From the IMG/VR virus record IMGVR_UViG_3300032334_002567, positions 317,444 through 381,443 of that record: 64,000 nucleotides of DNA, one strand, 5' to 3'. Shown here piece by piece: positions 1-36,500 of this stretch; positions within the stretch are counted from its first letter, which is position 1; every line of letters starts with the position of its first letter. Under the pieces are notes generated by a model. It had not been told where the DNA came from, did not search any database, and saw nothing but the letters and a program-made list of their open reading frames with translations. The position numbers were made by a program, and so were the translations under genes.

Positions 1-181
1 CGACGGCCAGCCTGCAAAGATTGTGGGTTGGAAAGAAAAGTTTCCAATCGTGAGCCAAATCGACGGCCCTCTTGCTTTTGAGTGGTCGTGGGCCGCTGTC
101 AACAGGATCATGTCCGGTGATCGACAGTTCAAGAGCTAGATCATTTGTACCCTATTAAAGCGTTCAACACCCCAACGGAGA

Positions 182-514
182 ATGATCATGGAATACACCG
201 AAGCCCTCAAAGTTCTTGGCAAGCGTGATTCGAAGAAAGTCGGAAACAACACCTACATGATCCGGCTGGGTTCGGACATCGGTATTCGACTTCACAACAC
301 CGTTGTGGTGACCATCCATCCCGACAATACCTACACACTCAATAGCGGTGGATGGCAGACAGTGACAACAAAGGATCGGATCAACCAGTATTCACCGGTT
401 CGTGTGTATCAATCAAAAAGCGTTTGGTATGTCGGTCAAGGCGAGCTGTTTTACGACAACATGAAAGTCGGTGTCGTTTGCGGTGAGCCGCTAGCTTTAG
501 GAATTGTACCCTAG
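182..514 (+). CDS. Hypothetical phage protein (GGWQTVTTKDRIN motif)
   Basis: ORF after leader with GGAG RBS; its stop TAG lies inside the next repeat. Confidence 0.8.
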   Translation: MIMEYTEALKVLGKRDSKKVGNNTYMIRLGSDIGIRLHNTVVVTIHPDNTYTLNSGGWQTVTTKDRINQYSPVRVYQSKSVWYVGQGELFYDNMKVGVVCGEPLALGIVP

Positions 515-553
515 TAGGTTGTGTAACCACCCCCAACGGAGTTGTGAAAAAAC

Positions 554-835
554 ATGATGAACTACAGCGGTTGTAACAGCTGGATCTACATCTACGCCAT
601 CGGTGGCAATTGGAACCCCGGCCCCAGCGGTGACGAGTTCGTGGGCTGTGCCTACGACGCCTCCACTGCCCTCAGCCTGCTCGACTTGGTCGAGTTGAAG
701 GGTGGCTATGCCGTCAGCCTGCACGGTGACAACCTGCATACGCTCAATGCCGTCAGCGGCGAGTGTGGTGTGCGGGAAGCCCGTATCATGTTCAAGCTCT
801 GGAAAGAGAAAGAGGCGGTCGTTGTCGCTGGGTAA
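554..835 (+). CDS. Hypothetical protein, cassette gene
   Basis: ORF fills the space between repeats at 504 and 847; GGAG RBS. Confidence 0.7.
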   Translation: MMNYSGCNSWIYIYAIGGNWNPGPSGDEFVGCAYDASTALSLLDLVELKGGYAVSLHGDNLHTLNAVSGECGVREARIMFKLWKEKEAVVVAG

Positions 836-888
836 CAATAAATAAATTGTACCCTAAAAGAGTGTTCGATCCCAACGGAGAAGCGATC

Positions 889-1032
889 ATGGAAATTAAA
901 TTCAACTTCAAAACACGTCAGTACGACGTTTGCATCACATTCTTCGACGGCAGAACCCCCATAAATGTTTGCTCTTTCTACAAAGAGTCGGATGCTCGCG
1001 CCTACGTCATGGTTCACAATGTCAAGTGTTAG
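889..1032 (+). CDS. Hypothetical 47-aa protein (MEIKFNFK...)
   Basis: ATG 889 follows CCCAACGGAG; restart within track ORF 763..1032. Confidence 0.7.
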   Translation: MEIKFNFKTRQYDVCITFFDGRTPINVCSFYKESDARAYVMVHNVKC

Positions 1033-1091
1033 ATTCAATAAATAAATTGTACCCTGACAGAGTGTTCGATCCACCCCAACGGAGTTTTGAA

Positions 1092-1244
1092 ATGACCGAA
1101 AACGAAATCAATGTTCTGGAAGAGGCCGCATCGCACATTCGAAACGATGCTTACAACTGCGATAGCAGTCTGGATCGCAAGTATTTCGAAAAGCTTGCCG
1201 ATAAGATCGAAGACATTATCGCCAAGCATAATCAAAGCAAATAA
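1092..1244 (+). CDS. Hypothetical 50-aa protein (MTENEINV...)
   Basis: ATG after leader RBS; stop abuts the next repeat. Confidence 0.75.
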   Translation: MTENEINVLEEAASHIRNDAYNCDSSLDRKYFEKLADKIEDIIAKHNQSK

Positions 1245-1293
1245 ATTGTACCCTAGATGATTGTTCGATTCACACCCCAACGGAGAAGCGATC

Positions 1294-1674
1294 ATGGCAA
1301 GCTGGTACACCGTCAGCGAGAGCAAGATTCAGTGGGCTCCCATCGGCACCCGTGTTCTGAAGACTGGCGAGACTAAGCCGAAGTTTTCCCGGATCGGCGT
1401 CCGTATCAATATGGTGGACGGTAGCTGGTGGTTCCACAGCTTCAAGCACGATAGCTGGACGCAACACTATCCCCGGAAGCAGGCCACCGACAAGCTGGGA
1501 CGGCCCATTTTCGAGGATGGTCAGCCGCTCCTGCGACCGGAACGCAAGGAAACCTACCGCAACTGGATGGCGGTTGTGAGAGAGTTCGGCACTCGACTGC
1601 CCGCTCTGGTTGTCGCTCTGGAAAACGGTCACGCCGAAGCTCTGCTAGCCGAAGCAGAGAAAACGGCAGCGTAA
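1294..1674 (+). CDS. Hypothetical protein (MASWYTVS...KTAA)
   Basis: ATG after CCCCAACGGAG; restart within track ORF 1261..1674. Confidence 0.8.
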   Translation: MASWYTVSESKIQWAPIGTRVLKTGETKPKFSRIGVRINMVDGSWWFHSFKHDSWTQHYPRKQATDKLGRPIFEDGQPLLRPERKETYRNWMAVVREFGTRLPALVVALENGHAEALLAEAEKTAA

Positions 1675-1681
1675 AACGTGT

Positions 1682-1738
1682 GCTAGGGGCGGCAAGGCTC
1701 TACGGCCAAAAGCCGCGAAACTGCTAGCCGCCCCTAGC
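1682..1738 (+). other. GC-rich hairpin without U-tract (linker type B)
   Basis: GCTAGGGGCGGC / GCCGCCCCTAGC perfect 12-bp inverted repeat. Confidence 0.8.
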
Positions 1739-1810
1739 CCGTTGGGGTACTTATAAATAATTGTACCCTAAAAGTGTGTTGCGAACGCCCCTCTTTTTCA
1801 AGGATGAAAA

Positions 1811-1981
1811 ATGTACGCTCTGACGATGATCATAGGTTTTCTTGGCTACGGGTTCGGGTACGAGGGTTGTGAAAAAGGAAAGATATATTTCGGCGTGTAT
1901 ACCCCCAAAGCCGAATATGGTTGGGTCATGACAGAAAAAGACGTTTATCTGGATACCGTGTACCAGAAAACTTCTAAATAA
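1811..1981 (+). CDS. Hypothetical 56-aa protein (MYALTMIIGFLGYGFGY...), not in ORF track
   Basis: Manually translated; AAGGA RBS; TAA abuts the repeat at 1983. Confidence 0.65.
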   Translation: MYALTMIIGFLGYGFGYEGCEKGKIYFGVYTPKAEYGWVMTEKDVYLDTVYQKTSK

Positions 1982-2022
1982 ATTGTACCCTAGTTGATTG
2001 TTCGATCCAACCCCAACGGAGA

Positions 2023-2247
2023 ATGACAATGCCAAATATCAACTGGTTCGACGGTCAGAATGCGGTTGGCAAGTACGTTATGGAACTCATGTACGACGAC
2101 GGTAGCGTCAGCTACATGAAAAATGAGAACTACGAGCAGATTTGCCACTACTACCGGCTTGCTTTGGAAATGTCGGAAGTGGTGGGTGCGACCATCTACA
2201 ACCCAAAGTGGCAAGTAGTTTGCTCGACAGCACGGGCCGCAGCGTGA
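2023..2247 (+). CDS. Hypothetical protein ending ARAAA
   Basis: ORF after leader/RBS. Confidence 0.75.
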   Translation: MTMPNINWFDGQNAVGKYVMELMYDDGSVSYMKNENYEQICHYYRLALEMSEVVGATIYNPKWQVVCSTARAAA

Positions 2248-2353
2248 ACACGGTTGCCTGGGCGGGTTGAGACAAAACTCCCCGCCCTGGCCTGTTAGGG
2301 TATTTATATTGTACCCTATAGAAGTGTCAGCCACCCCAAACACAGGAGCCAAT

Positions 2354-2515
2354 ATGAGCAATAACGAAAAACCGTACTGCTTCGAAGAAGCCCGTTTCAA
2401 GCGTGAAATGGAATACGTGGCTCGTAAGCTCAAAGAGGCGTTGGAACTCAAGGAATACGCCAAACAACTGGCAAAAGAAAAAGAACAAAAAGAGAAAGAG
2501 GAAAGCCGGGACTAA
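2354..2515 (+). CDS. Hypothetical 53-aa charged protein (MSNNEKPY...)
   Basis: AGGAG RBS before ATG 2354. Confidence 0.7.
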   Translation: MSNNEKPYCFEEARFKREMEYVARKLKEALELKEYAKQLAKEKEQKEKEESRD

Positions 2516-2535
2516 CACCCCCGGTTCTCTTTTTT
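2504..2535 (+). terminator. Rho-independent terminator (linker type A)
   Basis: GCCGGG..CCCGGT stem followed by TCTCTTTTTT. Confidence 0.7.
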
Positions 2536-2595
2536 AGTCGGCCATAGGGTACAAATAAAATAAAAAGGGATATACAATAATTGTACCCTATAACA

Positions 2596-2713
2596 GTGTG
2601 AATGATTGCGAGGCCGCACCATCGGCACTACTGTCCGGTTGCAAACGGCAGTAACTCGCGGGAGCGGTATGCCGAAAGGCAGCGAGTGGTGCACCCCATC
2701 GCAATCGTTCACA
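2596..2713 (+). ncRNA. Putative structured ncRNA (~118 nt) occupying a cassette slot
   Basis: 15-bp closing stem 2597-2611/2699-2713 (one G-U); inner stems GCACCA/TGGTGC, TACTG/CAGTA, CTCGC/GCGAG and a TGCC-GAAA-GGCA tetraloop hairpin; no RBS; flanked by repeats at 2581 and 2723. Confidence 0.7.
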
Positions 2714-2766
2714 ACAAAACAATTGTACCCTAGAAAAGTGTTCGATTCACCCCAACGGAGACGATC

Positions 2767-3102
2767 ATGACTTTCGTCAACCTGACCCCGCACACGATCA
2801 CTGTGGTTCTCGACAATACCAGCGTGCAATTCCCGGCTTCTGGCAACGTGGCCCGTGTTTCCACCAGTCGAGTCTCTGGCCCCACGCTAACCGTCTACGG
2901 CGATTCTGTCGGTATCCAGACTTCCCGTGTCGAGTTCGGGGCAGTCGAGGGGCTTCCCGATCCCGTGGACGGCACGGTTTACATTGTGAGCGGAATGGTC
3001 GCAGCCCGTGTCAACCGGCCCGACGTTTTCGCTCCCGGTGAACTGGTGCGTGATGCAAACGGCCAGCCCACCGGCTGCAAGGGTCTGACTTGCAGCGGTT
3101 GA
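2767..3102 (+). CDS. NLTPH-motif protein; possible Crn4-like ring nuclease
   Basis: Motifs NLTPH, GLPDP..G..YIVS, RPDV..PG..VRD..G...GC..L. Family link recalled, not searched. Confidence 0.55.
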   Translation: MTFVNLTPHTITVVLDNTSVQFPASGNVARVSTSRVSGPTLTVYGDSVGIQTSRVEFGAVEGLPDPVDGTVYIVSGMVAARVNRPDVFAPGELVRDANGQPTGCKGLTCSG

Positions 3103-3159
3103 TTATTATAATTGTACCCTATAGAAGTGTTCGATCCCAACCCCAACGGAGACTCACGA

Positions 3160-3600
3160 ATGAACGACATTCTTCTCGCCGCCCTGACCAGCTGCTTCAG
3201 CAAGATGGCAAAGGCCGCTGGCCCGATTGCCCCCGGCCTGCACCAGGTCGATGAAACGATCACGATGCGGGTCAAGGGCGAGGTGCTGAAGTCGGACGAC
3301 GAAACCTACGTCCCGACGATTGCGATTCCCGTCAAGGCCGTGATGGCTACGTTGCTCCCCCGGTTGGGTGCGACACGGGAGGCTGCGATGGAAACGCTTA
3401 TCGCCGCCATGACTGAAGCGGTCAATCTGGACAAGCTGGGCGATGAAACGCTCAAAGCCCGGATGAAAGACGTTGACGCGGCTTTCGAGCATGTGCAGAA
3501 CGTGCTCGACGCCCTCCCGCCAAAGACACGGACGGGAAAGACGAACGTGGACGTGACCCTTGTGGTCGCTCCCACGCCCGCCGTCGCACTTGTCCCGTGA
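3160..3600 (+). CDS. Hypothetical 146-aa protein (MNDILLAA...)
   Basis: ATG after CCCCAACGGAG; restart within track ORF 3112..3600. Confidence 0.8.
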   Translation: MNDILLAALTSCFSKMAKAAGPIAPGLHQVDETITMRVKGEVLKSDDETYVPTIAIPVKAVMATLLPRLGATREAAMETLIAAMTEAVNLDKLGDETLKARMKDVDAAFEHVQNVLDALPPKTRTGKTNVDVTLVVAPTPAVALVP

Positions 3601-3612
3601 CGATACGGCATC

Positions 3613-3644
3613 GGGGGCGGGAGGAACTAACAACTCCCGCCCCC
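3613..3644 (+). other. GC-rich hairpin (linker type B)
   Basis: GGGGGCGGGAG / CTCCCGCCCCC perfect 11-bp stem. Confidence 0.8.
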
Positions 3645-3709
3645 ACTAGCCGTTTGTGCAATTGTACCCTATTGGTTTGTGTGATTCGTCCCTTTACTTT
3701 GGAGCAGTT

Positions 3710-3892
3710 ATGGAAGCGAAAATCGAGAACGGCTTTCTGGTTCTGCGAGTCCCGATGAATGCAACGCCGATTCGTTCGTCTACCGGCAAGACTTTGGTGG
3801 TTGCCTCGACCTATGGCAACAAGGCAACCGAAGTGACGGTGGACGGCAAGACGGTCACCGTGGGCGTCAACGCCTATATCAAGGCCGCTTGA
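3710..3892 (+). CDS. Hypothetical 60-aa protein (SSTGKTLVVASTYGN motif), ends KAA
   Basis: GGAG RBS, ATG 3710. Confidence 0.8.
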   Translation: MEAKIENGFLVLRVPMNATPIRSSTGKTLVVASTYGNKATEVTVDGKTVTVGVNAYIKAA

Positions 3893-3913
3893 CCCCAACG
3901 GTTCGGATCGAAA

Positions 3914-3950
3914 GCCGGAGGGGACAGCCACCCCCTCCGGTTCTTTTTTT
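3914..3950 (+). terminator. Rho-independent terminator (linker type A)
   Basis: GCCGGAGGGG / CCCCTCCGGT stem + TCTTTTTTT. Confidence 0.85.
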
Positions 3951-4039
3951 AGCCCGCCATAGGGTACAAATAAATATATAAAATAATTGTACCCTAGATA
4001 AGTGTTCGATCTAACCTTCCCTCTCACTTGGAGTCAACG

Positions 4040-4108
4040 ATGATCGCTCTCGTTCTCGCGTTTGGCCTTGGTTTCGCCGCCATTTCTGCCGTTTACTGGG
4101 TGCTGTAA
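4040..4108 (+). CDS. 22-aa hydrophobic peptide MIALVLAFGLGFAAISAVYWVL
   Basis: Own leader repeat at 3987 and GGAG RBS; manually translated. Confidence 0.55.
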   Translation: MIALVLAFGLGFAAISAVYWVL

Positions 4109-4201
4109 AGCTCCCAGTCTAACACCTGAGTGATTAGGGTATAAAGTAATTGTACCCTAGATAAGTGTTCGATCCGATCCCACCCCAACCGGAGACGCAC
4201 G

Positions 4202-4495
4202 ATGAAGAACGCTTTCGACCGCACGAACAGCATGAAGAACAAGCTCAAGGCCGATTGGAACCGGATGGTGGGGGAACTGGTGTCCATCCCCGCCGGTTGC
4301 CAGATTCACAGCCTGACGCTCACGCAGACCAACTTCGGTTGGGTCTACGCCCGGAAGCACGGCCAGCCCGTGCCGGTCGCCCAGTTGCGGAACGCCGCCG
4401 TGACGAAGGGTTACTGTATCCTGCACGACGGCCCCAACTTCCGGGTGGCCCTCCCGCCGAAGCGGAACGGGGAGCCGGTCAAGGCCGCAGCGTGA
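4202..4495 (+). CDS. Hypothetical protein ending VKAAA
   Basis: ORF after leader/RBS. Confidence 0.8.
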   Translation: MKNAFDRTNSMKNKLKADWNRMVGELVSIPAGCQIHSLTLTQTNFGWVYARKHGQPVPVAQLRNAAVTKGYCILHDGPNFRVALPPKRNGEPVKAAA

Positions 4496-4503
4496 ACACG
4501 GTT

Positions 4504-4538
4504 GCCGGGGCGGGTCGAGACTAACTCCCCGCCCCGGC
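4504..4538 (+). other. GC-rich hairpin (linker type B), near-copy of 2256-2291
   Basis: GCCGGGGCGGG / CCCGCCCCGGC; flanks GGCCGCAGCGTGAACACGGTTGCC and TATTTATATTGTACCCTATAGAAGTGT are shared with 2235-2327. Confidence 0.8.
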
Positions 4539-4611
4539 CCCGTTGGGGTACTTGTATTTATATTGTACCCTATAGAAGTGTTCGATCCCCACCCCCAACC
4601 GGAGCCGCCCC

Positions 4612-5001
4612 ATGTTGAATGAAGCGTTCTTTCAGGTGTGCAACGATGCCGTCCCCGCAAAGTCCAGCTACGTCTCGCTCTACGTCAACGTGCCGTACTA
4701 CGGTGGGCCGGAGGAAGGTGGATGGTGGGGCAGTGACACCGCACTAGTCGCTCACTACAAGTGTGACAGCCAGCCCCATGCCGAAGCTGTGAAGGCCCGT
4801 GTCGAGGAGCTGGCCCAGCAGTTGAGCGACGATGCCCGCCGGTCGTTTGGTCAAGCCTGCAAGGCCCAGTGTGAATGGCTGGACGCACGTGGGTTGGACG
4901 CCGACTACCTGCCCGAAGTGGACGGGGAGGAAACCTACTGGGTCGCCGTCGAGGATCGCCCCGGTGAACACGCCAGCCAAGGGTGCAGGCACTACGAATA
5001 A
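4612..5001 (+). CDS. Hypothetical phage protein (YGGPEEGGWW motif)
   Basis: ORF after leader; stop abuts the repeat at 5004. Confidence 0.8.
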   Translation: MLNEAFFQVCNDAVPAKSSYVSLYVNVPYYGGPEEGGWWGSDTALVAHYKCDSQPHAEAVKARVEELAQQLSDDARRSFGQACKAQCEWLDARGLDADYLPEVDGEETYWVAVEDRPGEHASQGCRHYE

Positions 5002-5025
5002 AATTGTACCCTATCAAGCACACCG

Positions 5026-5060
5026 ACCGGAGGGGACAGCCAACCCTCCGGCTTTCTTTT
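5026..5060 (+). terminator. Rho-independent terminator (linker type A)
   Basis: CCGGAGGG / CCCTCCGG + T-tract; near-copy of 3914-3950. Confidence 0.8.
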
Positions 5061-5255
5061 CAGCCCGCCATTGGGTACAAATAAAGTAATACATAATAAT
5101 TGTACCCTAGTAATATACAGGAGGGTATTACAAAGATAATAATACAGAAATAAAAAGCGAAAACCTTTTAAAAAAATTGTACCCTAGGTACCCTCCCCCC
5201 CGCAATTACTGTCTTATTTTTTAAGTCGTCCTGACTTTTTTTCCCGTATTAGCAC

Positions 5256-5324
5256 CGTTGCAAAATCCCGGTTACAAACGTTGCAAAATCCCGGTTACAA
5301 ACGTTGCAAAATACCAGTTACAAA
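5256..5324. repeat. 3 x 23-bp tandem repeat CGTTGCAAAATCCCGGTTACAAA
   Basis: Two exact copies and one with two mismatches. Confidence 0.9.
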
Positions 5325-5664: not shown

Positions 5665-5739
5665 GTCCCGTAAGGAGATCACAAAGAAGTTCTCTAGGAG
5701 AAAAAATGAAAGTCAAAAGCAGGTAGTGTTCTTACTAAA

Positions 5740-5922
5740 ATGATAGCAAAACTTATTTTAGCTTTTTTGCTGATTATAACCATTCTTGTTGGTTATAGTT
5801 CTATTCAAGCTGTTGCAGAACCTACAAAAGTAGAGAAAAAAGTAGAAGACAAATCGAAATGTTTTTGTAATGGATTAAGTTTGCCCCAAGAGCGTCAGTG
5901 TCCAACAATGAACGATTTGTGA
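5740..5922 (+). CDS. Small protein with N-terminal signal/TM segment
   Basis: Hydrophobic N-terminus. Confidence 0.5.
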   Translation: MIAKLILAFLLIITILVGYSSIQAVAEPTKVEKKVEDKSKCFCNGLSLPQERQCPTMNDL

Positions 5923-12167: not shown

Positions 12168-12527
12168 ATGAGCAATAATTCTTTTAAATCGTGGTTGAAA
12201 CTATCGGAAGATGGTGGAGGTGCCGGTGGTGGTGGAGGTGCCGGTGGTGGTGGAGGTGCCGGTGGTGGTGCCGGTGGTGGTGGAACTAGTGGTGGTGGAA
12301 CTAGTGGTGGTGGAACTAGTGGTGGTGGAACTAGTGGTGGTGGAACTAGTGGTAGTGGAACTAGTGGTGGTGGAACTAGTGGTGGTGGAACTAGTGGTGG
12401 GCAAAATCCTCCCATGGGCAGTGGAACTGGCAAAGATAATATCGCCAAAGTTCCTACACGTTGGGGATGTTGTGGAATTTGGCCATATTGGAAAAAGAAA
12501 AGAAGAAAAAAGAAAAAAAGTGGATAA
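12168..12527 (+). CDS. Gly-rich low-complexity protein with basic tail
   Basis: FKSWL..SE N-terminus, (GGGTS)8, C-terminal WKKKRRKKKK. Confidence 0.65.
   Translation: MSNNSFKSWLKLSEDGGGAGGGGGAGGGGGAGGGAGGGGTSGGGTSGGGTSGGGTSGGGTSGSGTSGGGTSGGGTSGGQNPPMGSGTGKDNIAKVPTRWGCCGIWPYWKKKRRKKKKSG
12213..12398. repeat. Coding tandem repeats (GGTGGTGGAACTAGT x ~8 and GGTGGAGGTGCC units)
   Basis: Directly visible. Confidence 0.9.
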
Positions 12528-12996
12528 TAAAGAGCTACTGCCTTCCATTCCTGATGATCAAAAAAAGAAGGTATTCTCGTTAATAGAGGAATTTAAGAAT
12601 TTTGCTTTTAAGGGCAACGTTGTTGATCTAGCTGTGGGTATGGTTATTGGGAGTTCTTTTAGTAATATAGTAAACAGTTTAGTCAACAACCTAATTACTC
12701 CGATAATAGGTATAGTTTTACCGGGTGATGTTGGACTTAAAGATTGGCAAATAGTTGTTGGCGAAAAACGAATACCTTTTGGTGCATTCTTTAATGATGT
12801 ATTTGGATTCTTACTCACTGCGACTATTTTGTTCTTATTCTTGAAGAAGTTTTTAGTTTGGTTGTTGAAGTCTAGAAGAGAGGTGGACTTGAACAAACCT
12901 CCTCTAACTAAAGACCAAGAACTATTGCGTCAAAACAACGAAGTACTTAACCAAATAAAAGACATTTTATTGAGAAGTCAAAGTACCGGACTATAG
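12520..12996 (+). CDS. mscL: Large-conductance mechanosensitive channel
   Basis: EEFKNFAFKGNVVDLAVGMVIG, second TM, ELL..IKDIL tail; probable GTG start at 12520. Confidence 0.92.
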   Translation: MDNKELLPSIPDDQKKKVFSLIEEFKNFAFKGNVVDLAVGMVIGSSFSNIVNSLVNNLITPIIGIVLPGDVGLKDWQIVVGEKRIPFGAFFNDVFGFLLTATILFLFLKKFLVWLLKSRREVDLNKPPLTKDQELLRQNNEVLNQIKDILLRSQSTGL

Positions 12997-23033: not shown

Positions 23034-24506
23034 TTATTTCTTTAGTGAATCTATCCATTTTTTTGTTGATAGATTTTGCTTAACATAGTCGAATTCTTTA
23101 CCTTGCGGCGATCTGCCTAAAAGATCAGTATATGCTGGATTTATTGCTCTTTTTCCTTTTTCATCCGTTATATAAGGGGCTAAATCGCTTTCATCGTGGT
23201 CAATAAAACTATTAAATTCATCTTTATCTAGGTTGACCATCTTCATCCAATCCTTGATTTTGGACTTTGTTAATCCACTATGAGCCTTTTTTATACTATA
23301 AAATTGATTTGAATCAAAATTGTTATTTTTACCCCAATTATAAAGTTTGACAAGATATGCAATATCGTTAGCTTCTTGGCTAGTCCAACCATTCGATGTA
23401 AGAAGTTCTTTTACTTGATCTGGGGAATTATTCCTTAGAACCCAAGCGACACTCAACCATCTGTCCCCTACAAAGTTTTCTGGCATTTCTTCTTCTGTTG
23501 AGAATTCCACACCAGGAAAAATTTGACTAAATATATCAAGTGAATGGGCCGTCTTCATTAGTTTTCTAGGATCTACATCAGGATGCTCTAAAGTACTGAT
23601 AAAATCTTTTTTCACTAATTCTTTTGGAAGACTGGCGATGCTCTTTGAATGGCTTTTTATTATCTTTGCATAATCCTTTGGCAGAGATTCTGGGTTGCCG
23701 TATCTTGCATTTGTTTTTAGAAGTCTTAGTGCAATTGCTGGGTCTTCTTTGAGTCTATCTTCTAGTTTTTCTCCTACTACCTTTATTTGGCTGTTCTTTA
23801 GATGGGTAGCTCCACCATATGGATCTATTAGTTCACTATTATCGCCATCTGCGTTTGATAATGGTATGTATAGAGAGTTTATAGTTAAGTCTCTATTTGA
23901 CGAATCTTCTTCTATAGATGAAGCAGACTCAGCCTTATCAGGTTGTATTCTTCTGCTTTTTAGACTCTTTGACAAAGTTGCTATTTCAAACTCTTCACCA
24001 TTTATTTCTACCGTTATCTCTAATTCTTTTCCCTGTTTATCCCACCTAGAAACATAGAAAGATTTCTTATTTGTAGATGTTGGTAGCTTTGCATATCTTT
24101 TTTCTTCAGGAAGATTTTTTGGTTTAACTTCTGAGAAACCTTCTTCGGATTGGTCTAATATCATTCTTACTTCACTTATTGTAGCGTCTGTTACCAAGTC
24201 ATAATTTCTTGGTGTCTTGCCTTTTAAGTGATCACGCACGGCACCACCGGTTAAATACAAAGATTTTTTCTTTAACTGTGGCTCTATTTCGCCTTTTGAT
24301 TTGTCGATAGTGGTATAGCCCAGTCCAACTTGGTTCGAGCCATTAAAAGCTTTTACAAGATATCTCAAATTAGCATGAGAGTTTTTATTGATGGCAAAAG
24401 GAGTAAACTCTTTGTCTCCTAGTTTCTTCTGAAGTTTAACCTTAGATGTAACTGATTCTGGCTCTTTGGCTTGCTCCCTGAACTGATAATACTTTGAGAA
24501 TTTCAT
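23034..24506 (-). CDS. Class II nucleotidyltransferase (CCA-adding/poly(A) polymerase-like), atypical active site
   Basis: GGAVRDHL..KTPRNYDL, EIATL, EDSSNRDLTINS, IDPYGG, EDP...LR. Confidence 0.8.
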   Translation of the reverse strand: MKFSKYYQFREQAKEPESVTSKVKLQKKLGDKEFTPFAINKNSHANLRYLVKAFNGSNQVGLGYTTIDKSKGEIEPQLKKKSLYLTGGAVRDHLKGKTPRNYDLVTDATISEVRMILDQSEEGFSEVKPKNLPEEKRYAKLPTSTNKKSFYVSRWDKQGKELEITVEINGEEFEIATLSKSLKSRRIQPDKAESASSIEEDSSNRDLTINSLYIPLSNADGDNSELIDPYGGATHLKNSQIKVVGEKLEDRLKEDPAIALRLLKTNARYGNPESLPKDYAKIIKSHSKSIASLPKELVKKDFISTLEHPDVDPRKLMKTAHSLDIFSQIFPGVEFSTEEEMPENFVGDRWLSVAWVLRNNSPDQVKELLTSNGWTSQEANDIAYLVKLYNWGKNNNFDSNQFYSIKKAHSGLTKSKIKDWMKMVNLDKDEFNSFIDHDESDLAPYITDEKGKRAINPAYTDLLGRSPQGKEFDYVKQNLSTKKWIDSLKK

Positions 24507-24560
24507 TTTTACCCCAATCATTATTTTAATAAAGTTATTTATGCCTTATTATAGTATTTT

Positions 24561-30580: not shown

Positions 30581-33500
30581 ATGCCAGAATTATACGACAA
30601 CCTAGGAAGAAAAATAGATGCTGCCAAAATGAGCATTGGCGAGCTAAAGGGTTTAGTCGGCACATTGATGAAGTCTAAAGTTGGACCAGCAAAACCTATT
30701 GGTGGTCAAGAAGAAGAAGCTAAAACACAAGACTCAAATCTAGAACTTATTAAATTATTTGAAGACTATGTAAAAGGATTTAACGAAGAAGTAGATGAAC
30801 AAAAGAGTTTACTTCAAAATATAGTAGATGCATTAAAAAATATTAATTCTAAAAAAGAAGAAAAAGCTAATCAACCAAAAGACAACAAAGAAGAAAAAGA
30901 TGAGATAAAAGAAACATTTCCAGAAAAATTAAGAAAAGCTCTTACTGGAAAAAACAAGCCTAGCAAAGAAGAGCATACAACTGCTAAGGCTACAAATTCT
31001 TTAGCAAATCTATTCGGGAAAAAAGGTTCTGGCTATACCCATGATATACACTGTGAGGCATGGCTAAGACAAATATATCAGGTTTTAGCTAAAGATAGAG
31101 AAGGCGTAGCAACGCCAGAAGCCGCTGCTAGGCAGGTTGAAGAAGATGTAACAAGAGTCACAGCAAGAGAACCTGCAGAAACAGCTGCAAGGGAAGCTTC
31201 TGAGGCAGCTACTACTGGAGGGGGCGAGACTATAAGAGCGAGAGATTGGCTAGATGCCGAAGAGTACTACCAAGAGTTAAACGGATTAGAAAATGATTAC
31301 TATCAACACACAGTAGATTCAATATTTGGACTATGGAACAAAGAAAAAGATTTATACGAAAGAATAACAGGCTTAGAAAAAGAAAAAAATGCAATTCACC
31401 GTGCTTATTTGAAGGAAGGCATCAGCAAAGAGGAAAAAGAAAGACTAGCTTTAGCTTACAGGCAAATGGGCATAGAAATAAGCAATCAAAAAATCATAAA
31501 AAGAAATTTAAAAGAACAAGAGAACGCTTGGAAAGAGATTGGAAAACAAATAGAGACAGCAGAAAAATATTTATTAGGTTTCAAAGGAGGCGGGGCGTTT
31601 GAGGTACTAACAAAAGGAATAATAAAAGAAGAAAGAGAATTTACACAAAATATTAGACAAGCGGCATATGAAACTGCTGGAGTCACTTCTGAGTCTAAGG
31701 CCCTGCAAAAAACATACGAAGAGATAGGCAAAACTTCTAAACTAACCGGAATGAATAGGAGTGAAACTCAAAAAGCTTATACAAAAGCATTAAGGTCAGG
31801 TGTCAAAGATCAAAAGAAAGCACTTAGTCTATCAGTATCACAACTAAACACAGAAAAACAAATAGGTGCCACAGCAGATTCTTTAGGTGAATTCTTCATA
31901 GAAATGGGCACCCAACTTCAGTTCAACAATGATCAAATGTCAGAGGTTGGAAGAGGCATAAGAGAAGCTGGTCGAAACACTGGTTTGGTAGGAGATAAAT
32001 TAGCTGGCGTTGTCAGGGGCAGTGCAGAATTTGTAAAAATGATGAAAAATGCTGGTACTGCGTCTGCATCTGCCGTGAGTAATATTGTTGGTTTACAAGC
32101 AGAGTTTACAAAGACAGGCGTAGAAGGAGGAAAGCTTCTTAAAGGACTAAGCAGTACATCTGGATTCTTAGGTAGTGATGCACAAACATTGGCTTTGATT
32201 GCTAATGCTGCTAACAGAGTTGGTCTTACTCAAGAAATGATTAATGGAACAATACTAAAAAGTTCAGCTAGCATTAAAAAGTTTAACAGAGGCTTGACTC
32301 AAACTGTCAATGACATGGGATTGGGTGGTAGAAACGCCGAAGAAATGCGAGCAAACTTTGACAAATTGTCAGATGAAGGCAGAAGAGATATCAATTTAAG
32401 ACTCAACGCAGCTTTTGGGATGGAAGCCGGTGAGTTAATGTTAGCAATAGAAGGAATCGAAAATCAATCTAAATCACTTTCTGATCGTTTGGGAGAACTT
32501 AATAAAAAGAAATCTCAAAACTTAACATTAGAAGAAAAAGCTACATTGCTTGAAGAAGAAAGAAGCTTGAAACTTGGTGCAGCAACAAAAGCTCTGACTG
32601 CAATATCTGAGGCCGCTAAGGGCACAAAAGACATGAACGAGGCCTTAGCAAAATTTAGCAGTAGAAGATCCGAATTTGAAGGCGACATGAAGGCACTCGG
32701 ACAATCCTGGACAACCGAGACAGATGTTGCTAGGGGAGCTATAAAAAGTGCTTTAGAAAATGTAAATGCTGGCTTGAAAAAAGCAGGAAAGAAAGAACTA
32801 AAAATAGACTCGTCGGAAATAGAAAAAGCAATAAAAGACCCAGCAGCATTCAGAGAACTAACGTCTCAAATAACTAAGGGAGAGCAAGAATTAGCTACTG
32901 CACAAAAAGCACAATTAGACCCATTGAGTGCAATAGAACAAAAGTTAACTGAAATAAACGACTCTGTGAGAAACTTGAGCCAAAGTTTGATATCGGGTAT
33001 TTTTAATAGTTTTCTAGGAAAAATGCTTGTGGGGATAACAGCTTTAGGAGCTTTAATTGTAGGTGCCATAGGTGGATTGAATTCAATAATCATGCCTATT
33101 TGGAACTTAATGACTCTTTTAGGAAGATCTTTATCCGGTATGGGACAAAGAACATCACAGGATAGAATGGGAAGTCTTGGGAAGGTATGGGATCGCTTAA
33201 CTGGGCGTGATACAACCCCAACCCCAGAAAGATTAACAGAAGCAGAAGTAACAGCTACCGGTAAAGATAAAACTATAACTAAAACTGGTTGCTGCGAGGA
33301 TCTTGTAAGTATAAACAAAGCAATGTTGGATGTTTTAAATGCCATTAAAGATTGTGTTTGTGGCAAACAACCAGAAGCTTCTACTCAAGCAAGTCAAACA
33401 AAACAGGAGTTAAGAGAAGCGGAACTAACACCCAAATCAGTAGTATCACCAGATCAAGTTGCAGCTGGTAAAGCAGGAGAAGTTGCCAAAAAAGAAGTAG

Positions 33501-36500
33501 GAACAGACTTAGCTTCTAAATCAGTAGTTTCACAGCCACCACAAACTACTCCAGAAAAAATAGAAGAAGCTGTTAAAAAAGAAAGTAGGAAACCAAAGTT
33601 ATCTCCTGAGGAGATTGCCACAAGAAAAGCAGCTGGACAGGCAGCTAAAGAGAGATCACAAACAGCCGGTATAAGTCCTTCAGTAGCAAAGTCCATAAAG
33701 AGACAAGAAGTCAAAAATATAAAAATGGATGCTTCATTAAACAAAATGCAAAGAAGGAATATAATTCAAGAATTGCAGAACGGAAAAAAAACAAAGACAA
33801 TGATCCTAAGAGAGCAGGAAGCTGCTAAAGGACCAAAGCCCTTAGAAGTACCCCAGCCACCAGATACAGGAAATTTTGATTTAAATAAATTAATTGCAAG
33901 TGGTCAAGATATGGCAAAGAGTGCTGCTGCTGTTGCCCTACTTGGTTTAGGAGTTGTTGCTCTAGGTGCAGCAATAGTGTTCTTGTCCAAGAAAATATTG
34001 AGTGGGTTCAACTTAGACACTTCAACAATACTACAAACAGCTGGTGCTATAGCTGCACTTGCGGTAGCAGGTGGTGCGATTGCTGCTGCTGGTATTGTGG
34101 CATATGAGGCACTAAATAAGAAAGAAAATAAAGAATTTGTAGATACTGCTCCAAAAAGTAAAACCGAAATGCTAAAGCAAATAGCAGCAATGATGCTATT
34201 GGGGCCAGCTCTTGTACTATTAGGTGCAGCTATAGTCAAGATGTCCCAAATGGTTATAGACGCTTTTGGACTTGATTTAAATACGGTTGCAATGGTTGCC
34301 GGAACAGTAGCTGCAATTGTAGCTGCTGCTGGAGCCTTGACTCTAGGTGCTTCAGAGGCTCTTGAAGGTTTTGAGAAACTAGAGGGCAATAAGCTTATAA
34401 AAAATCCTGGTAAACTTGTTAGTGCGATGGCTAAGGGAGCATTAGCTCTATTGATCGTTGGTCCGGGACTAGTTGCACTTTCTGCCGCAATAATCAAGAT
34501 GTGTCAAGGTATATTAAGCTATGCAGAAATAGATCTAAACACAATCAAAACTGTAACTGGACAAGTAGCCGCACTTCTCGCTGGCACTGGTGCAATAGCA
34601 TTAGGTATAACAGCGGCTGCTGGAGGATTAATACTATTAGGTAAATTCGCAGACTTTGCCAAGAGCTATGCTAAAGACATGATAATAGGAGCGGCAGCAC
34701 TAATACTTATTGGTCCTGCAGTTGTAGCCCTTGCAGCAGGTCTAAATTATATAATTAATCAAATTTTATCTGCAACAGGTGTGGACGCAGCAAAAGCAGC
34801 AAAAACAGCGTGGAATGTAGCTGGTTTGATTGCGGCCACAGCTGTAATTGCTCTTGCGGTTATGGGTGCGATGGCGGGCTTAACAGCTTTAGGTGCACTT
34901 GCTACTGCCATGACAGGACCACAAATTGGATTCATGCTTTATGGTGCTGCTGCATTATTATTGTTAGCTCCATTAGTTACCGGACTAGCTGCGGCTGTTT
35001 TATATTTAACCAAGTCTTTCATGGGTGGGTTTGACGCAAAACAAGCAACCAAAGTGGCATACGATCTATCTGCAGTTTTAATGTCTGCCTCTGTTATAGC
35101 CATAGCTGTAATGGCGGCCATGGCTGGACTGGGTGGTTTAGGAGTTCTTGCAGCTGGTTTACCTGCTTACATACCTGCTATGTTGGGTGGTGCAGCAGCT
35201 CTAATGCTGCTTACCCCGGTAATGACAGCTTTGGCAACTTCAGTAATAGGAATGACAGAATCCATAATGGATGGAATTGATGCTAAACACGCAGCTAAAG
35301 TTGCATATGATTTGGGGTCAATAATAATGTCTGCTGGCTCAATTGCTCTTGGGATCATGGGAGCCATGGCAGCTCTAACAGGATTAGGATTATTGGCAGG
35401 TGCTTATATTGGATTTATAGGACCAATGATTGGCGGTGCTCTGGCATTGAGTGTAATGACACCGGCTGTTGTAACCCTTGCTGGCTCCATTATATCGATG
35501 TCTGAATCTTTAATGAAAAATATGGTTAGCCCAGATGCTGCAAAGAAAACAGTTGAAAGCTTAAATTCTATTCTTGATAGTGCTGGCAATATAGCTGTGT
35601 CAATTATAGCCAACGCAGCTTCTCTGGCTCTTTTGGGAACAATGTTTGGTGTTTCTTTAGTAGCTATACCATTTATGAAGCTAGGCACTATGGCTTTGTC
35701 TAATCTAACACCTAGTATAGCAAATTTTGTAAACACTATTGTTAATATGGCAAAACAATTTTCTACTTTAGTGTCTCCAAAAGAAGCTGTAAGCCTCTCT
35801 AAAGACGTCGCCGCTATAATGGGAGCGGTTGGAGATATAAGTGAACAAATATTCAAAATTAAAGATAAAATGCTTTCTGTGCCTGTTTATGGAAGCGTTT
35901 GGAATGCAATAAGAGGTGTAAAAGTAGCCGATTATATGAATAGTGGGGTCAAAGCTCTGAAAGAATTAGCTGCTCCTGTTCAAGATTATGTTGCTGCCAT
36001 AAAAGATTTTGCACTTAATGTTGGAAGAACAGTTAATCCAAGAAATGCTGCTGAAATGGCGAGAGGCGTTGCCGCAATACTTTGTGCTGTTAGCAATGTA
36101 ACTTCTAATATGATGACTGCTAAAGACGGTATACTTTCTATTCCTAAAAATGGAGGAATTTTTGCGACTTTAACACGCACAAGAATTTCAGATTACCTTA
36201 ATGCTGGCGTTGGTTCTTTGCAAGAAATGGCCGCACCAATTAAACGATATGTAGCAGCAGTGAAAAAATTTGCAAGTGAAATTGGATTTGATCCTAGACA
36301 AGCTGCTGAGATGGCTAGCGGTGTGGCAGCGATACTTTGTGCTGTTGGTAAGGTTACTTCTAACATAATGACTGCTAAAGATGGAATAATGAGCATACCA
36401 GACAACGGTGGAATATTTGCTTGGATGCTAGGTGCTCAGTTATCCCAAAGAATGAACAAAGGCGTCGAAGCACTTAAAGTACTTGGAAAACCAATACAAA

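What the first reader, a model, noticed from the sequence alone, without database searches (positions are those of the whole stretch)
2581..2731. A cassette whose cargo is a structured ncRNA rather than a protein
Seen: the slot between the repeats at 2581 and 2723 lacks the CCCCAACGGAG/RBS. Starting at the same +6 GTGT position is a ~118-nt sequence closed by a 15-bp stem (TGTGAATGATTGCGA / TCGCAATCGTTCACA, one G-U pair). It continues into GCACCA/TGGTGC and a three-way junction with a TACTG/CAGTA arm and a CTCGC/GCGAG arm. The latter has a GGGAGCGGUA bulge and a UGCC-GAAA-GGCA GNRA hairpin. The G-U pair and GNRA loop point to RNA-level structure. The match between its 5' end and the conserved GTGT independently supports the promoter reading. 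Inference: a phage small RNA (decoy, antitoxin mimic, RNA anti-CRISPR or ribozyme) that I cannot assign to a known family.
Basis: partly seen in the sequence, partly recalled or inferred. Interest (0 to 1): 0.8.

Follow-up and report, generated by a model that had tools for sequence, protein, structure and literature searches.

The report
Structured RNA slot beside phage Crn4b
In the early-gene array of an uncultivated 381-kb freshwater phage, one promoter-to-promoter slot holds no gene but a very stably folding ~120-base sequence, probably a small RNA, directly in front of a Crn4b ring nuclease gene (an enzyme phages use to destroy CRISPR alarm molecules). Its role is untested, because only near-identical copies could be found.

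Summary
Window 2596-2716 is an ORF-less unit between two copies of the array's repeat (AATTGTACCCTA-N5-[G/T]TGT). It folds at -60.7 kcal/mol (z -5.0) and is the most stable 121-nt window in the array. It has a 15-bp closing stem that starts 1-2 nt after the presumed transcript start.

The minimum-energy fold has three hairpins, two with GNRA loops.

There is no Rfam, tRNA or ribozyme match. The slot's ORFs score unlike the array's 13 genes.

Covariation cannot be tested: only three other copies were found, each with two changes, both at unpaired bases. No RNA-seq run was listed. No terminator follows the element.

New context:
- The gene immediately downstream (2767-3102) is a Crn4b-type ring nuclease, a likely anti-type-III-CRISPR enzyme.
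- The unit is cleanly present or absent among close relatives, with deletion junctions inside the repeats, as in PeSL-type shuffling.
- The same arrays carry tRNA genes and other ORF-less, stem-closed units.

Best reading (0.4): a processed, stable phage small RNA belonging to an anti-defence module. Rivals are a cis-acting leader of crn4b, a CRISPR-repeat mimic, a functionless palindromic insert, and a small peptide. It is an orphan candidate RNA of moderate interest.

The parts
2506..2536 (+). GC hairpin (2506-2524) followed by a T run. It ends the preceding unit (gene 2354-2515).
   Evidence: Sequence. The hairpin is listed. The same hairpin-plus-T-run arrangement (a different hairpin sequence) recurs at 3913-3950 and 5027-5060.
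2545..2555 (-). Inverted copy of the repeat core (TTTGTACCCTA), 25 nt before the forward copy.
   Evidence: The same arrangement follows the terminators at 3960-3970 and ~5073.
2579..2595 (+). Promoter-like repeat of the RNA slot (AATTGTACCCTA + 5 nt).
   Evidence: Consensus of 43 distinct copies. Not sigma-70-like. That it is a promoter is inferred, not shown.
2596..2716 (+). Candidate structured RNA, 121 nt counted from the G of GTGT.
   Evidence: No Rfam or tRNA match.
2597..2611 (+). P1 5' strand. Pairs with 2699-2713 (15 bp, one U.G), extended by GG 2612-2613 with CC 2696-2697.
2699..2713 (+). P1 3' strand. The next repeat begins 8 nt later.
2616..2622 (+). P2 5' strand. Pairs with 2686-2692 (7 bp, one U.G).
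2629..2653 (+). Hairpin A: 5+3 bp, 8-nt loop GUUGCAAA.
   Evidence: pair probabilities 0.84-0.93.
2654..2668 (+). Hairpin B: 2+3 bp, GNRA loop GGGA.
2670..2681 (+). Hairpin C: UGCC-GAAA-GGCA, a GNRA loop.
2721..2766 (+). Next promoter-like repeat and the standard leader, with CCCCAACGGAG (SD GGAG at 2757-2760).
2767..3102 (+). Crn4b-type ring nuclease gene (111 aa). It lies directly downstream of the RNA in every haplotype that has the RNA.
   Evidence: AF2 model pLDDT 96.4. Foldseek top hit 9r7b, named Crn4b in the chain list: E 8.5e-11, TM 0.81. Profile against PDB sequences: Crn4b E 1.4e-21. The NLTPH motif and a conserved Arg are kept, matching T13/H15/R112 of PMC12830947.
3160..3600 (+). 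146-aa gene of unknown function, next unit on the same strand.
   Evidence: no informative match.

Best explanation
The slot is an RNA gene inside a phage early-gene array built from repeated promoter(+terminator) units.

Proposed mechanism:
- Transcription starts at the (G/T)TGT a few bases after the AATTGTACCCTA repeat.
- The first ~118 nt fold into a closed domain: a 15-bp stem starting at nt 2-3, a 7-bp second stem, and three hairpins, two capped by GNRA loops.
- No terminator follows, so the polymerase runs on into the crn4b ring-nuclease gene.
- The folded domain is then cut out at the base of its long stem (an RNase III-type substrate) or simply survives decay. It accumulates early in infection as a stable small RNA, much as the tRNAs in the same array must be cut out of longer transcripts.
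- It acts in trans, as a protein-binding or decoy RNA in host takeover or anti-defence. It is genetically coupled to the ring nuclease that destroys cyclic-oligoadenylate signals of type III CRISPR (and possibly CBASS).

Shown: the sequence, its exceptional folding energy, the absence of a credible ORF, its modular presence or absence, the identity of the neighbouring gene, and the RNA genes in the array.

Inferred: promoter activity, the transcript start, processing, stability, and any trans function.
For: - Folding: z -5.0 on the sense strand. This is the best GC-corrected 121-nt window of the array, and the optimum sits exactly at 2596.
- Strand-specific RNA features: two U.G pairs and two GNRA tetraloops on the sense strand only.
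- Not coding: no leader/SD, and the slot's ORFs score unlike the 13 array genes. No Pfam hit for the 43-aa ORF.
- Modularity: the unit runs from repeat to repeat. It is present in L017, L018, L019 and one X7 contig and absent from L015, L016 and L020-L024. The L020/L021 junction (TATAACATTGT|TCGATCCC) is a chimera of the RNA-slot repeat and the next leader, which indicates loss by recombination between repeats.
- Linkage: it stays joined to crn4b behind three different upstream genes.
- RNA genes in the same array: tRNA genes sit immediately before promoter copies without terminators of their own.
- Analogous units in relatives: they show the same layout of promoter, long closing stem, branched interior, next promoter. 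Examples are L017:2652-2800 with a canonical T-arm and L108:4496-4715, z -4.3.
- Neighbour: a Crn4b ring nuclease. Chi et al. 2025 (PMC12830947) propose that phage Crn4b acts as an anti-CRISPR.
- Divergence from the three relatives: 2 of 121 positions in the RNA against 76 of 1613 (4.7%) in five flanking genes.
Against: - No covariation: the four copies give two distinct sequences and all 43 pairs are invariant.
- No distant homologue turned up in about 150 fetched loci, in IMG/VR, in JGI metagenomes or in GTDB, using pattern scans plus a covariance model.
- No RNA-seq run was listed.
- No terminator-like site follows the element, so a free small RNA needs a processing step for which there is no evidence.
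- The lower divergence is not significant (binomial p about 0.07, my arithmetic). Other intergenic pieces are equally conserved.
- Close relatives do without the unit, so it is dispensable.
- The promoter nature of the repeat is itself inferred.
Confidence: 0.4

Rival explanations
1. Cis-acting 5' domain of a longer crn4b mRNA. Transcripts from the upstream repeat carry the folded domain as a 5' cap-like stem-loop that protects against 5'-end-dependent decay (RNase E/RppH or RNase J), or that defines a processing site. This gives the ring nuclease a second, more stable message alongside the one from the repeat at 2721.
For: - No terminator lies between the element and crn4b.
- The stem begins 1-2 nt from the presumed 5' end. 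That is the geometry known to protect bacterial mRNAs (own knowledge).
- The element is always directly upstream of crn4b.
- crn4b homologues in distant relatives also have a conserved 5'-UTR hairpin with compensating stem changes, though it is unrelated in sequence.
Against: - A simple hairpin would be enough; the branched interior with two GNRA loops is more than a stabiliser needs.
- A complete promoter and leader sit between the element and the gene.
- The similarly built units in relatives precede other genes.
- The fold of 2596-2900 shows no interaction with the crn4b ribosome-binding site.
Confidence: 0.25
2. RNA anti-CRISPR (Racr) or crRNA-like decoy. Part of the RNA mimics a CRISPR repeat or crRNA of the host and ties up Cas6 or Csm/Cmr proteins, working alongside the ring nuclease against type III CRISPR.
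For: - It lies directly behind a promoter-like element, with no cas genes, next to a likely anti-CRISPR gene. Racrs are described as solitary repeat units often just downstream of a promoter and co-localising with acr genes (PMC10651486).
- From memory only, unverified: AUUGCGAG (nt 10-17) and GUUGCAAAC (nt 43-51) resemble the 3' tag and 5' start of one family of type III-associated repeats.
Against: - No Rfam CRISPR-DR model matched at E<=10.
- No CRISPR array is present in the window.
- The host and its repeats are unknown.
- The motif resemblance is short enough to be chance, and the library search could not confirm it.
- The supposed tag lies inside the 15-bp stem.
Confidence: 0.1
3. A palindromic insert or relic with no RNA function: a piece of DNA trapped between two repeats by the array's own recombination, or a DNA-level element such as a protein-binding palindrome or recombination hotspot. 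It would be transcribed only incidentally.
For: - It is dispensable and patchy among close relatives.
- It is an orphan with no detectable relatives.
- The minus strand also folds well (z -4.4), as any inverted repeat does.
- Empty units (promoter followed directly by a terminator) exist at 5004-5100.
- The 3' part carries a degenerate copy of the standard leader (CACCCCATCG), which suggests cobbling together from array parts.
Against: - Nested helices with two GNRA tetraloops and U.G pairs on the sense strand only are not expected of a DNA palindrome or decayed coding DNA.
- It is the most stable window of the array, in exact register with the repeat.
- It is kept with only two changes, both at unpaired bases, across haplotypes whose flanking genes differ by 3-8%.
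- The same architecture recurs with unrelated sequences in relatives.
Confidence: 0.2
4. A small protein: ORF 2602-2733 (43 aa, ATG 6 nt after the presumed start), or ORF 2669-2770 (33 aa, GGAG 4 nt upstream, running through the next repeat and ending in the ATCATGA of crn4b).
For: - Both ORFs stay open in all four copies.
- The one internal substitution is synonymous in the 43-aa frame, and the 3-nt deletion in relatives is in frame.
Against: - Codon-usage scores are 0.08 and -0.45 against 0.37-0.66 for all 13 array genes.
- There is no standard leader/SD. The internal SD and ATG are buried in hairpins B and C.
- The 33-aa frame would have to encode a peptide across a conserved promoter and leader.
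- No Pfam hit.
- With 99% identical copies, an open frame means nothing.
Confidence: 0.03

Closest known systems
RNA anti-CRISPRs (Racrs), solitary repeat units of phages (Camara-Wilpert et al. 2023, PMC10651486)
   Same: A small non-coding unit right behind a promoter, in a phage, without cas genes, next to an anti-CRISPR-type gene (here Crn4b).
   Different: Racrs are defined by likeness to a CRISPR repeat. None was found here (Rfam CRISPR-DR models) and the host's repeats are unknown. This RNA is a 120-nt closed multi-branch fold, not a single repeat hairpin.
PeSL cassettes (promoter-early stem-loop) of T4-type phages (PMC2839356, PMC4122927)
   Same: Repeated promoter(+terminator) motifs flank small accessory ORFs in a hyperplastic region. 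Units are gained and lost by recombination within the motifs. Here the deletion junctions lie inside the repeats.
   Different: The motif here is a different sequence and is probably read by a phage-specific transcription factor or polymerase. It sits in a huge (381 kb) freshwater phage, and the array is ~52% GC in a ~33% GC genome. PeSL units are described with ORFs, not with a structured RNA as sole cargo.
Stable RNAs in phage tRNA clusters (tRNAs; T4 species 1 and 2 RNAs: own knowledge, not checked here)
   Same: Phage-encoded, co-transcribed with neighbours, released by processing, with paired 5' and 3' ends. In this array tRNA genes also sit immediately before promoter repeats.
   Different: No tRNA-like features in this RNA. 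ARAGORN calls it only at an 80% threshold, with coordinates that run into the next repeat.
RNase III processing hairpins between T7 early genes (own knowledge)
   Same: A long interrupted duplex (15 + 2 + 7 bp with internal loops) in an early polycistronic transcript of a phage.
   Different: T7 sites are simple bulged hairpins of ~60 nt between genes. This element has its own promoter copy and a three-hairpin interior. Cleavage is untested.
Viral ring nucleases (AcrIII-1/Crn2; Crn4b, Chi et al. 2025, PMC12830947). This entry concerns the neighbouring gene.
   Same: The 111-aa product of 2767-3102 has the Crn4b fold and its conserved T/H/R residues. The size matches the short Crn4b form that the paper reports from phages and plasmids.
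   Different: Activity is not tested. This homologue sits in a promoter-repeat array of a huge phage and, in some haplotypes, behind a structured RNA.

Membership tests
Any Rfam 15 family (riboswitches, ribozymes, sRNAs, CRISPR-DR, Y RNA, pRNA, 6S, tmRNA) | Score at or above the family's gathering threshold against its covariance model | tested here: not met
   0 matches in the whole window at gathering thresholds. On 2500-2800 at E<=10 there were only sub-threshold chance hits to miRNA models and Ysr209.
tRNA / tmRNA | Cloverleaf with T-arm, D-arm and anticodon loop, as detected by ARAGORN or Rfam RF00005 | tested here: not met
   No tRNA in the window. At a relaxed 80% threshold ARAGORN gives a 'tRNA-Cys with intron' whose coordinates extend into the next repeat, i.e. 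spurious.
Racr (RNA anti-CRISPR) | Sequence and structure similarity to a CRISPR repeat of the host system | tested here: inconclusive
   No Rfam CRISPR-DR hit. The host's repeats are unknown.
Racr (RNA anti-CRISPR) | Solitary unit just downstream of a promoter, without cas genes | tested here: met
   It starts 5 nt after the array repeat. No cas genes or CRISPR array in the window. The promoter itself is inferred.
Racr (RNA anti-CRISPR) | Co-localisation with acr genes (frequent, not obligatory) | tested here: met
   The next gene is a Crn4b homologue.
Racr (RNA anti-CRISPR) | Binds Cas proteins and inhibits interference | not testable with these tools
   Needs experiments.
PeSL-type mobile regulatory cassette array | Conserved promoter (+ stem-loop terminator) motifs flanking small ORFs in a variable region | tested here: met
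   18 forward copies in 5.2 kb, at least 43 distinct copies in the phage, each ~30-45 nt before a start codon. Terminator hairpins occur between some units.
PeSL-type mobile regulatory cassette array | Insertions, deletions and replacements between close relatives with junctions in the motifs | tested here: met
   Clean one-unit indel. Chimeric junction in L020/L021, and a second junction type in L015/L016. Contig joints between repeats in X5/X6.
Integron cassette / attC | attC site with RYYYAAC...GTTRRRY cores; promoterless cassettes; integrase | tested here: not met
   The stem ends read TGTGAAT / GTTCACA, not the attC cores. Each unit carries its own promoter-like repeat. No integrase was seen among the ORFs scanned.
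Riboswitch | Conserved aptamer plus an expression platform (terminator or SD sequestration) acting on the downstream gene | tested here: not met
   No Rfam aptamer. No terminator. A full promoter and leader lie between the element and the gene. The fold does not touch the SD. A new ligand class cannot be excluded.
Structured RNA in general (R-scape-type criterion) | Significant covariation supporting the helices | tested here: inconclusive
   2 distinct sequences, 43 of 43 pairs invariant.
Crn4 ring nuclease (neighbouring gene 2767-3102) | Crn4 fold, conserved Thr/His near the N-terminus and a C-terminal Arg (T13, H15, R112 in PMC12830947) | tested here: met
   TM 0.81, E 8.5e-11 to 9r7b. Profile E 1.4e-21 to Crn4b. 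N5 L6 T7 P8 H9 and R84/R95 are nearly invariant in 40 homologues. Enzymatic activity not tested.

The most novel reading that the evidence does not exclude
The RNA is the RNA half of a two-part anti-signalling or anti-CRISPR module with the viral ring nuclease Crn4b. Either it is a crRNA/repeat mimic that disarms type III complexes, or it is a structured RNA that binds cyclic oligoadenylates or an effector. It would be one member of a so far undescribed class of promoter-to-promoter, stem-closed RNAs carried as swappable cargo in the early arrays of huge freshwater phages. Other candidate members are L017:2652-2800 and L108:4496-4715.
Probability: 0.15. Interest if true: 0.8.

Novelty: new member of a known kind. 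Interest (0 to 1): 0.5.

Why it matters
Phage early arrays are where anti-defence genes collect, and nearly all known cargo is protein. RNA-based counter-defence (Racrs, crRNA-like RNAs, pseudo-antitoxins) is recent and still thinly sampled.

A structured RNA kept next to a ring nuclease would give a concrete, clonable candidate for an RNA partner in the fight over cyclic-oligoadenylate signalling. The recurrence of similarly built units in related phages hints at a wider class.

Independently of the RNA, the work identifies a Crn4b homologue in a huge freshwater phage. It also documents a PeSL-like shuffling mechanism with mapped junctions outside the T4 group.

If the element turns out to be a mere leader or a relic, the finding is ordinary.

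Tried and rejected
1. Known RNA family: Rfam at gathering and at E<=10 gave nothing. tRNA/tmRNA: nothing.

2. Homologue hunt:
- Three IMG/VR pattern scans returned only the window's own two contigs or chance hits that the model rejects; a fourth, for L017b, found nothing.
- One JGI-metagenome scan gave 35 loci and one GTDB scan gave 29, using the pattern GGTTGCAAACG-N12-34-GCCGAAAGG. All were chance matches by covariance model R1. The best, L091 at 15.8 bits, aligns poorly.
- BLAST against INPHARED phages and PLSDB plasmids: nothing.
- R1 over about 150 loci, including with filters off, found only simple hairpins.

3. Context walk from the neighbouring genes (12 look-ups) found three more copies (L017-L019), all with the same two changes. 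The crn4b-anchored relatives at 57-73% aa identity and the 146-aa-gene-anchored relatives at 66-73% lack the RNA.

4. Reads: no RNA run was listed. DNA contigs of four lake runs gave one more L018-type copy and no new variant.

5. A T7-like or sigma-70 promoter could not be established. The sigma-70 scan shows no enrichment. An ECF-type sigma gene sits beside arrays of some relatives, but none is in this window. The 4404-aa ORF has no Pfam hit.

6. Pairing of the RNA's loops with the conserved mRNA leader was looked at by eye. Only the stem-locked 3' strand of P1 is partly complementary, so this was rejected.

7. The likeness of loop A (GGTTGCAAAC) to the 23-nt tandem units at 5249-5324 amounts to 3 hits against 0.37 expected, but two of them come from one tandem array. 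Too weak.

8. Homology between this RNA and L017:2652-2800 was suggested by a shared TCGCAATCG and GATGCGAG. R1 does not support it.

10. Attempts to verify the remembered type III tag motif in the literature library failed.

Full report
**Where the window comes from**

The window is identical to two IMG/VR contigs from different samples, one of 381,443 bp and one of 145,911 bp. Bases 5200-64000 are ~33% GC and encode tail and baseplate proteins, glycosyltransferases, a 4404-aa ORF and a CCA-adding-type enzyme. One structural protein (window 44764-46275, next to the baseplate gene) finds only a 595-kb uncultured huge phage in GenBank phages. DNA runs holding the sequence are freshwater lake metagenomes.

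Bases 1-5200 are different. They are ~52% GC and carry 18 forward copies of TTGTACCCT(A/G). Allowing one mismatch to ATTGTACCCTA gives 20 copies against 1.3 expected. Each copy is followed after 5 nt by (G/T)TGTTCGATcc, then CCCCAACGGAG, and then a start codon.

The array continues upstream of the window for more than 25 kb. At least 43 distinct copies give the consensus aaAATTGTACCCTA-N5-(T/G)TGTTCGAT. The motif is not sigma-70-like. A variant, TTGTACCTTA, is used in related phages, some of which have an ECF-type sigma gene beside the array. Another 340-kb phage contig has GGTCTATTGTACCCT. I therefore read the motif as a phage-specific promoter, but that is inference: no transcript data exist.

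**The observation**

Between the repeats at 2581 and 2723 the usual leader, SD and ORF are missing. The 121 nt from 2596 fold at -60.7 kcal/mol. Dinucleotide shuffles give -39.9 +/- 4.1 (z -5.0, none of 200 as good).

Among 1016 overlapping 121-nt windows of the array, the one starting exactly at 2596 has the largest GC-corrected stability. The next best are terminator regions.

So does a 7-bp stem, 2616-2622 with 2686-2692.

The CTCGC/GCGAG arm costs 5.6 kcal/mol and has ~0 probability. The favoured fold has three hairpins with loops GUUGCAAA, GGGA and GAAA.

Two GNRA tetraloops and two U.G pairs exist only on the sense strand. The antisense strand folds 6 kcal/mol worse. These are modest but real pointers to an RNA-level structure in the direction of the array.

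**Not a known family, not a gene**

Rfam gave no match at gathering thresholds anywhere in the window. At E<=10 on 2500-2800 it gave only chance sub-threshold hits, with no ribozyme, riboswitch, CRISPR-repeat, Y RNA, pRNA or tRNA model among them. ARAGORN finds nothing at normal settings. A relaxed-threshold call is spurious.

Two ORFs cross the slot:
- 2602-2733 (43 aa) has no SD.
- 2669-2770 (33 aa) has a GGAG 4 nt upstream, but it lies inside hairpins B and C and would run through the next repeat.

Their codon-usage scores are 0.08 and -0.45. All 13 array genes score 0.37-0.66.

**Relatives**

Homologues of the downstream gene gave contexts from other lakes. Three contigs (L017, L018, L019) hold the RNA. 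Each has the same two changes: G to T at the first base, and C to T in the unpaired ACCCCA bulge. They also share a 3-nt deletion just after the stem. One contig of run X7 is of the same type.

Seven contigs of equally close relatives (L015, L016, L020-L024) lack exactly one repeat-to-repeat unit. In L020/L021 the junction reads TATAACATTGT|TCGATCCC, which is the RNA-slot version of the repeat fused to the next leader. That shows loss by recombination between repeats. L015/L016 have a different junction. Contig joints between other repeats appear in runs X5 and X6.

This is the behaviour described for PeSL cassettes in T4-type phages (PMC2839356, PMC4122927).

The RNA stays attached to the downstream gene behind three different upstream genes. 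It differs from the relatives at 2 of 121 positions, against 76 of 1613 in five flanking genes. That is suggestive but not significant (p about 0.07), and other intergenic pieces are similarly conserved.

No diverged homologue was found:
- by pattern scans of IMG/VR, JGI metagenomes and GTDB followed by a covariance model;
- in moderately diverged arrays reached through the 146-aa neighbour;
- or with filters off.

Covariation is therefore untestable: 43 of 43 pairs are invariant. No RNA run was listed.

**The neighbourhood gives the most useful new fact**

The 111-aa product of 2767-3102 had no Pfam family and only PHROG families of unknown function. Its AlphaFold model is confident (pLDDT 96.4). 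The model matches the crystal structures of the CRISPR ring nuclease Crn4: 9r7b (named Crn4b) at E 8.5e-11, TM 0.81 and 37% identity, followed by the other Crn4 entries (9sma, named Crn4a, and 9qs9). A profile of 40 homologues hits Crn4b at E 1.4e-21.

[quoted passage not shown] The same paper notes that the short Crn4b form occurs in phages and plasmids and probably acts as an anti-CRISPR, possibly also against cA3-using CBASS (PMC12830947). Homologues occur in Microcystis, Paenibacillus, Bacillus and Thermobifida phages.

So the RNA slot sits at the head of an anti-defence unit. Racrs, the known RNA anti-CRISPRs, are solitary units just behind a promoter and often next to acr genes (PMC10651486). 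The defining Racr feature, likeness to a CRISPR repeat, could not be shown here.

**RNA cargo is not unique to this slot**

The same array holds tRNA-Leu, tRNA-Glu and tRNA-Gln genes on the same strand. The tRNA-Leu gene ends 4-5 nt before the next repeat and has no terminator of its own. This is the same layout as the candidate RNA.

Relatives have other ORF-less units built the same way, with a repeat, a long closing stem, a branched interior and then the next repeat:
- L017:2652-2800, with a canonical T-arm;
- L108:4496-4715, with a 19-bp closing stem and z -4.3.

Neither matches Rfam or model R1.

In the window, the three places where a terminator is followed by an inverted copy of the repeat core are each followed by an unusual unit. 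These are the RNA, a 22-aa hydrophobic mini-ORF, and an ORF-less AT-rich stretch.

**How it most likely works**

I commit, at 0.4, to an RNA gene.
- Transcription starts at the (G/T)TGT.
- The folded domain forms co-transcriptionally.
- With no terminator, the polymerase continues into crn4b.
- The domain is released or outlives the rest, as the tRNAs must be. The 24-bp interrupted P1-P2 rod is a plausible RNase III substrate.
- It acts in trans in host interference.

Every step after 'folds' is inferred.

The main rival (0.25) is a cis-acting 5' domain that stabilises or processes a second crn4b message. A specific Racr or crRNA-mimic reading gets 0.1, a functionless palindromic insert or DNA-level element 0.2, and a peptide 0.03.

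**Verdict**

The interpretation as a structured RNA is reasonable but unproven, and the specific functions offered are untested.

It is an orphan candidate small RNA of a known general kind (phage-encoded structured RNA). Its position in front of a viral ring nuclease, and the recurrence of similarly built units in related huge phages, make it more interesting. Interest 0.5.

Noticed in passing
window 2767-3102: The 111-aa gene after the RNA is a Crn4b-type CRISPR ring nuclease homologue (fold and profile match, catalytic T/H/R kept). It is likely a phage anti-type-III-CRISPR enzyme. Homologues occur in Microcystis, Paenibacillus, Bacillus and Thermobifida phages.
   Followed up: yes
window ~5200 (array end); 5249-5324: GC falls abruptly from ~52% to ~33% where the promoter array ends. 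Three tandem 23-nt units follow, each containing GGTTACAAAC / GTTGCAAAA, which resembles loop A of the RNA (GGTTGCAAAC). They may be iterons or a terminus-related site. The likeness to the RNA loop is near chance level.
   Followed up: partly
window 2545-2590, 3960-3996, 5073-5109: After three terminators the repeat core recurs inverted 25-35 nt before the next forward copy. This looks like divergent promoter-like pairs, or a 10-11-bp inverted repeat across an AT-rich spacer. The unit that follows is atypical each time: the RNA, a 22-aa hydrophobic mini-ORF at 4040-4108, and an ORF-less stretch at 5110-5175.
   Followed up: partly
window 5004-5100: An 'empty' unit: a promoter-like repeat followed directly by the standard terminator hairpin and T run, with no ORF.
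   Followed up: no
L017:2652-2800: In a close relative, another ORF-less repeat-to-repeat unit. It has a ~24-bp closing stem and three hairpins, one a canonical T-arm (CGGGUUCGACUCCCG) placed as in a tRNA. No Rfam or ARAGORN call. It replaces the mini-ORF unit of the window.
   Followed up: partly
L108:4496-4715 and L108:2645-2905: A more distant relative (73% identity in the 146-aa gene) has two ~220-260-nt ORF-less units after terminator plus inverted-repeat modules. The first is closed by a 19-bp stem (z -4.3). The second is not significantly structured (z -1.5). No Rfam match.
   Followed up: partly
L004:867-951; L010:5385-5458 and 5673-5743: tRNA-Leu(CAA), tRNA-Glu and tRNA-Gln genes lie inside the same promoter array upstream of the window. 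tRNA-Leu ends 4-5 nt before the next repeat.
   Followed up: yes
L025:9900-9960, L027:3210-3265, L030:9950-9990: crn4b homologues of distant relatives (57-60% identity) have a 5'-UTR hairpin, ACGT-[G/C]CGTGTT(G)T-ACGT, whose flanking stem changes compensate between the three phages. The motif occurs only there in those loci. It is a possible crn4b-specific operator or RNA hairpin.
   Followed up: partly
L110:12548-13042, L111, L114, L118 (minus strand): An ECF-type sigma factor gene (Sigma70_r2/r4_2) lies next to the arrays of related phages that use the TTGTACCTTA variant. It is a candidate reader of the repeat. No homologue in this window.
   Followed up: partly
window 30581-43795: A 4404-aa ORF with no Pfam match, upstream of the baseplate and tail genes.
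   Followed up: partly
window 23034-24521 (minus strand): A 495-aa ORF with a PolyA_pol head domain (CCA-adding enzyme type), in keeping with the phage's own tRNA genes.
   Followed up: no
window 61800-64000 and 12196-12423: Long runs of 15-nt periodic repeats with GC skew -0.67. On the minus strand they encode Gly-rich repeat proteins (fibre-like). A second Gly-rich repeat lies in the ORF at 12211-12996.
   Followed up: no
L012:2700-3000 (IMGVR_UViG_3300020172_001601, 340 kb): Another huge-phage contig uses GGTCTATTGTACCCT. Its first copy is followed only by a ~70-nt stretch ending in a hairpin and T run, then an inverted core copy and the next repeat. This may be a short RNA or an empty unit.
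   Followed up: no
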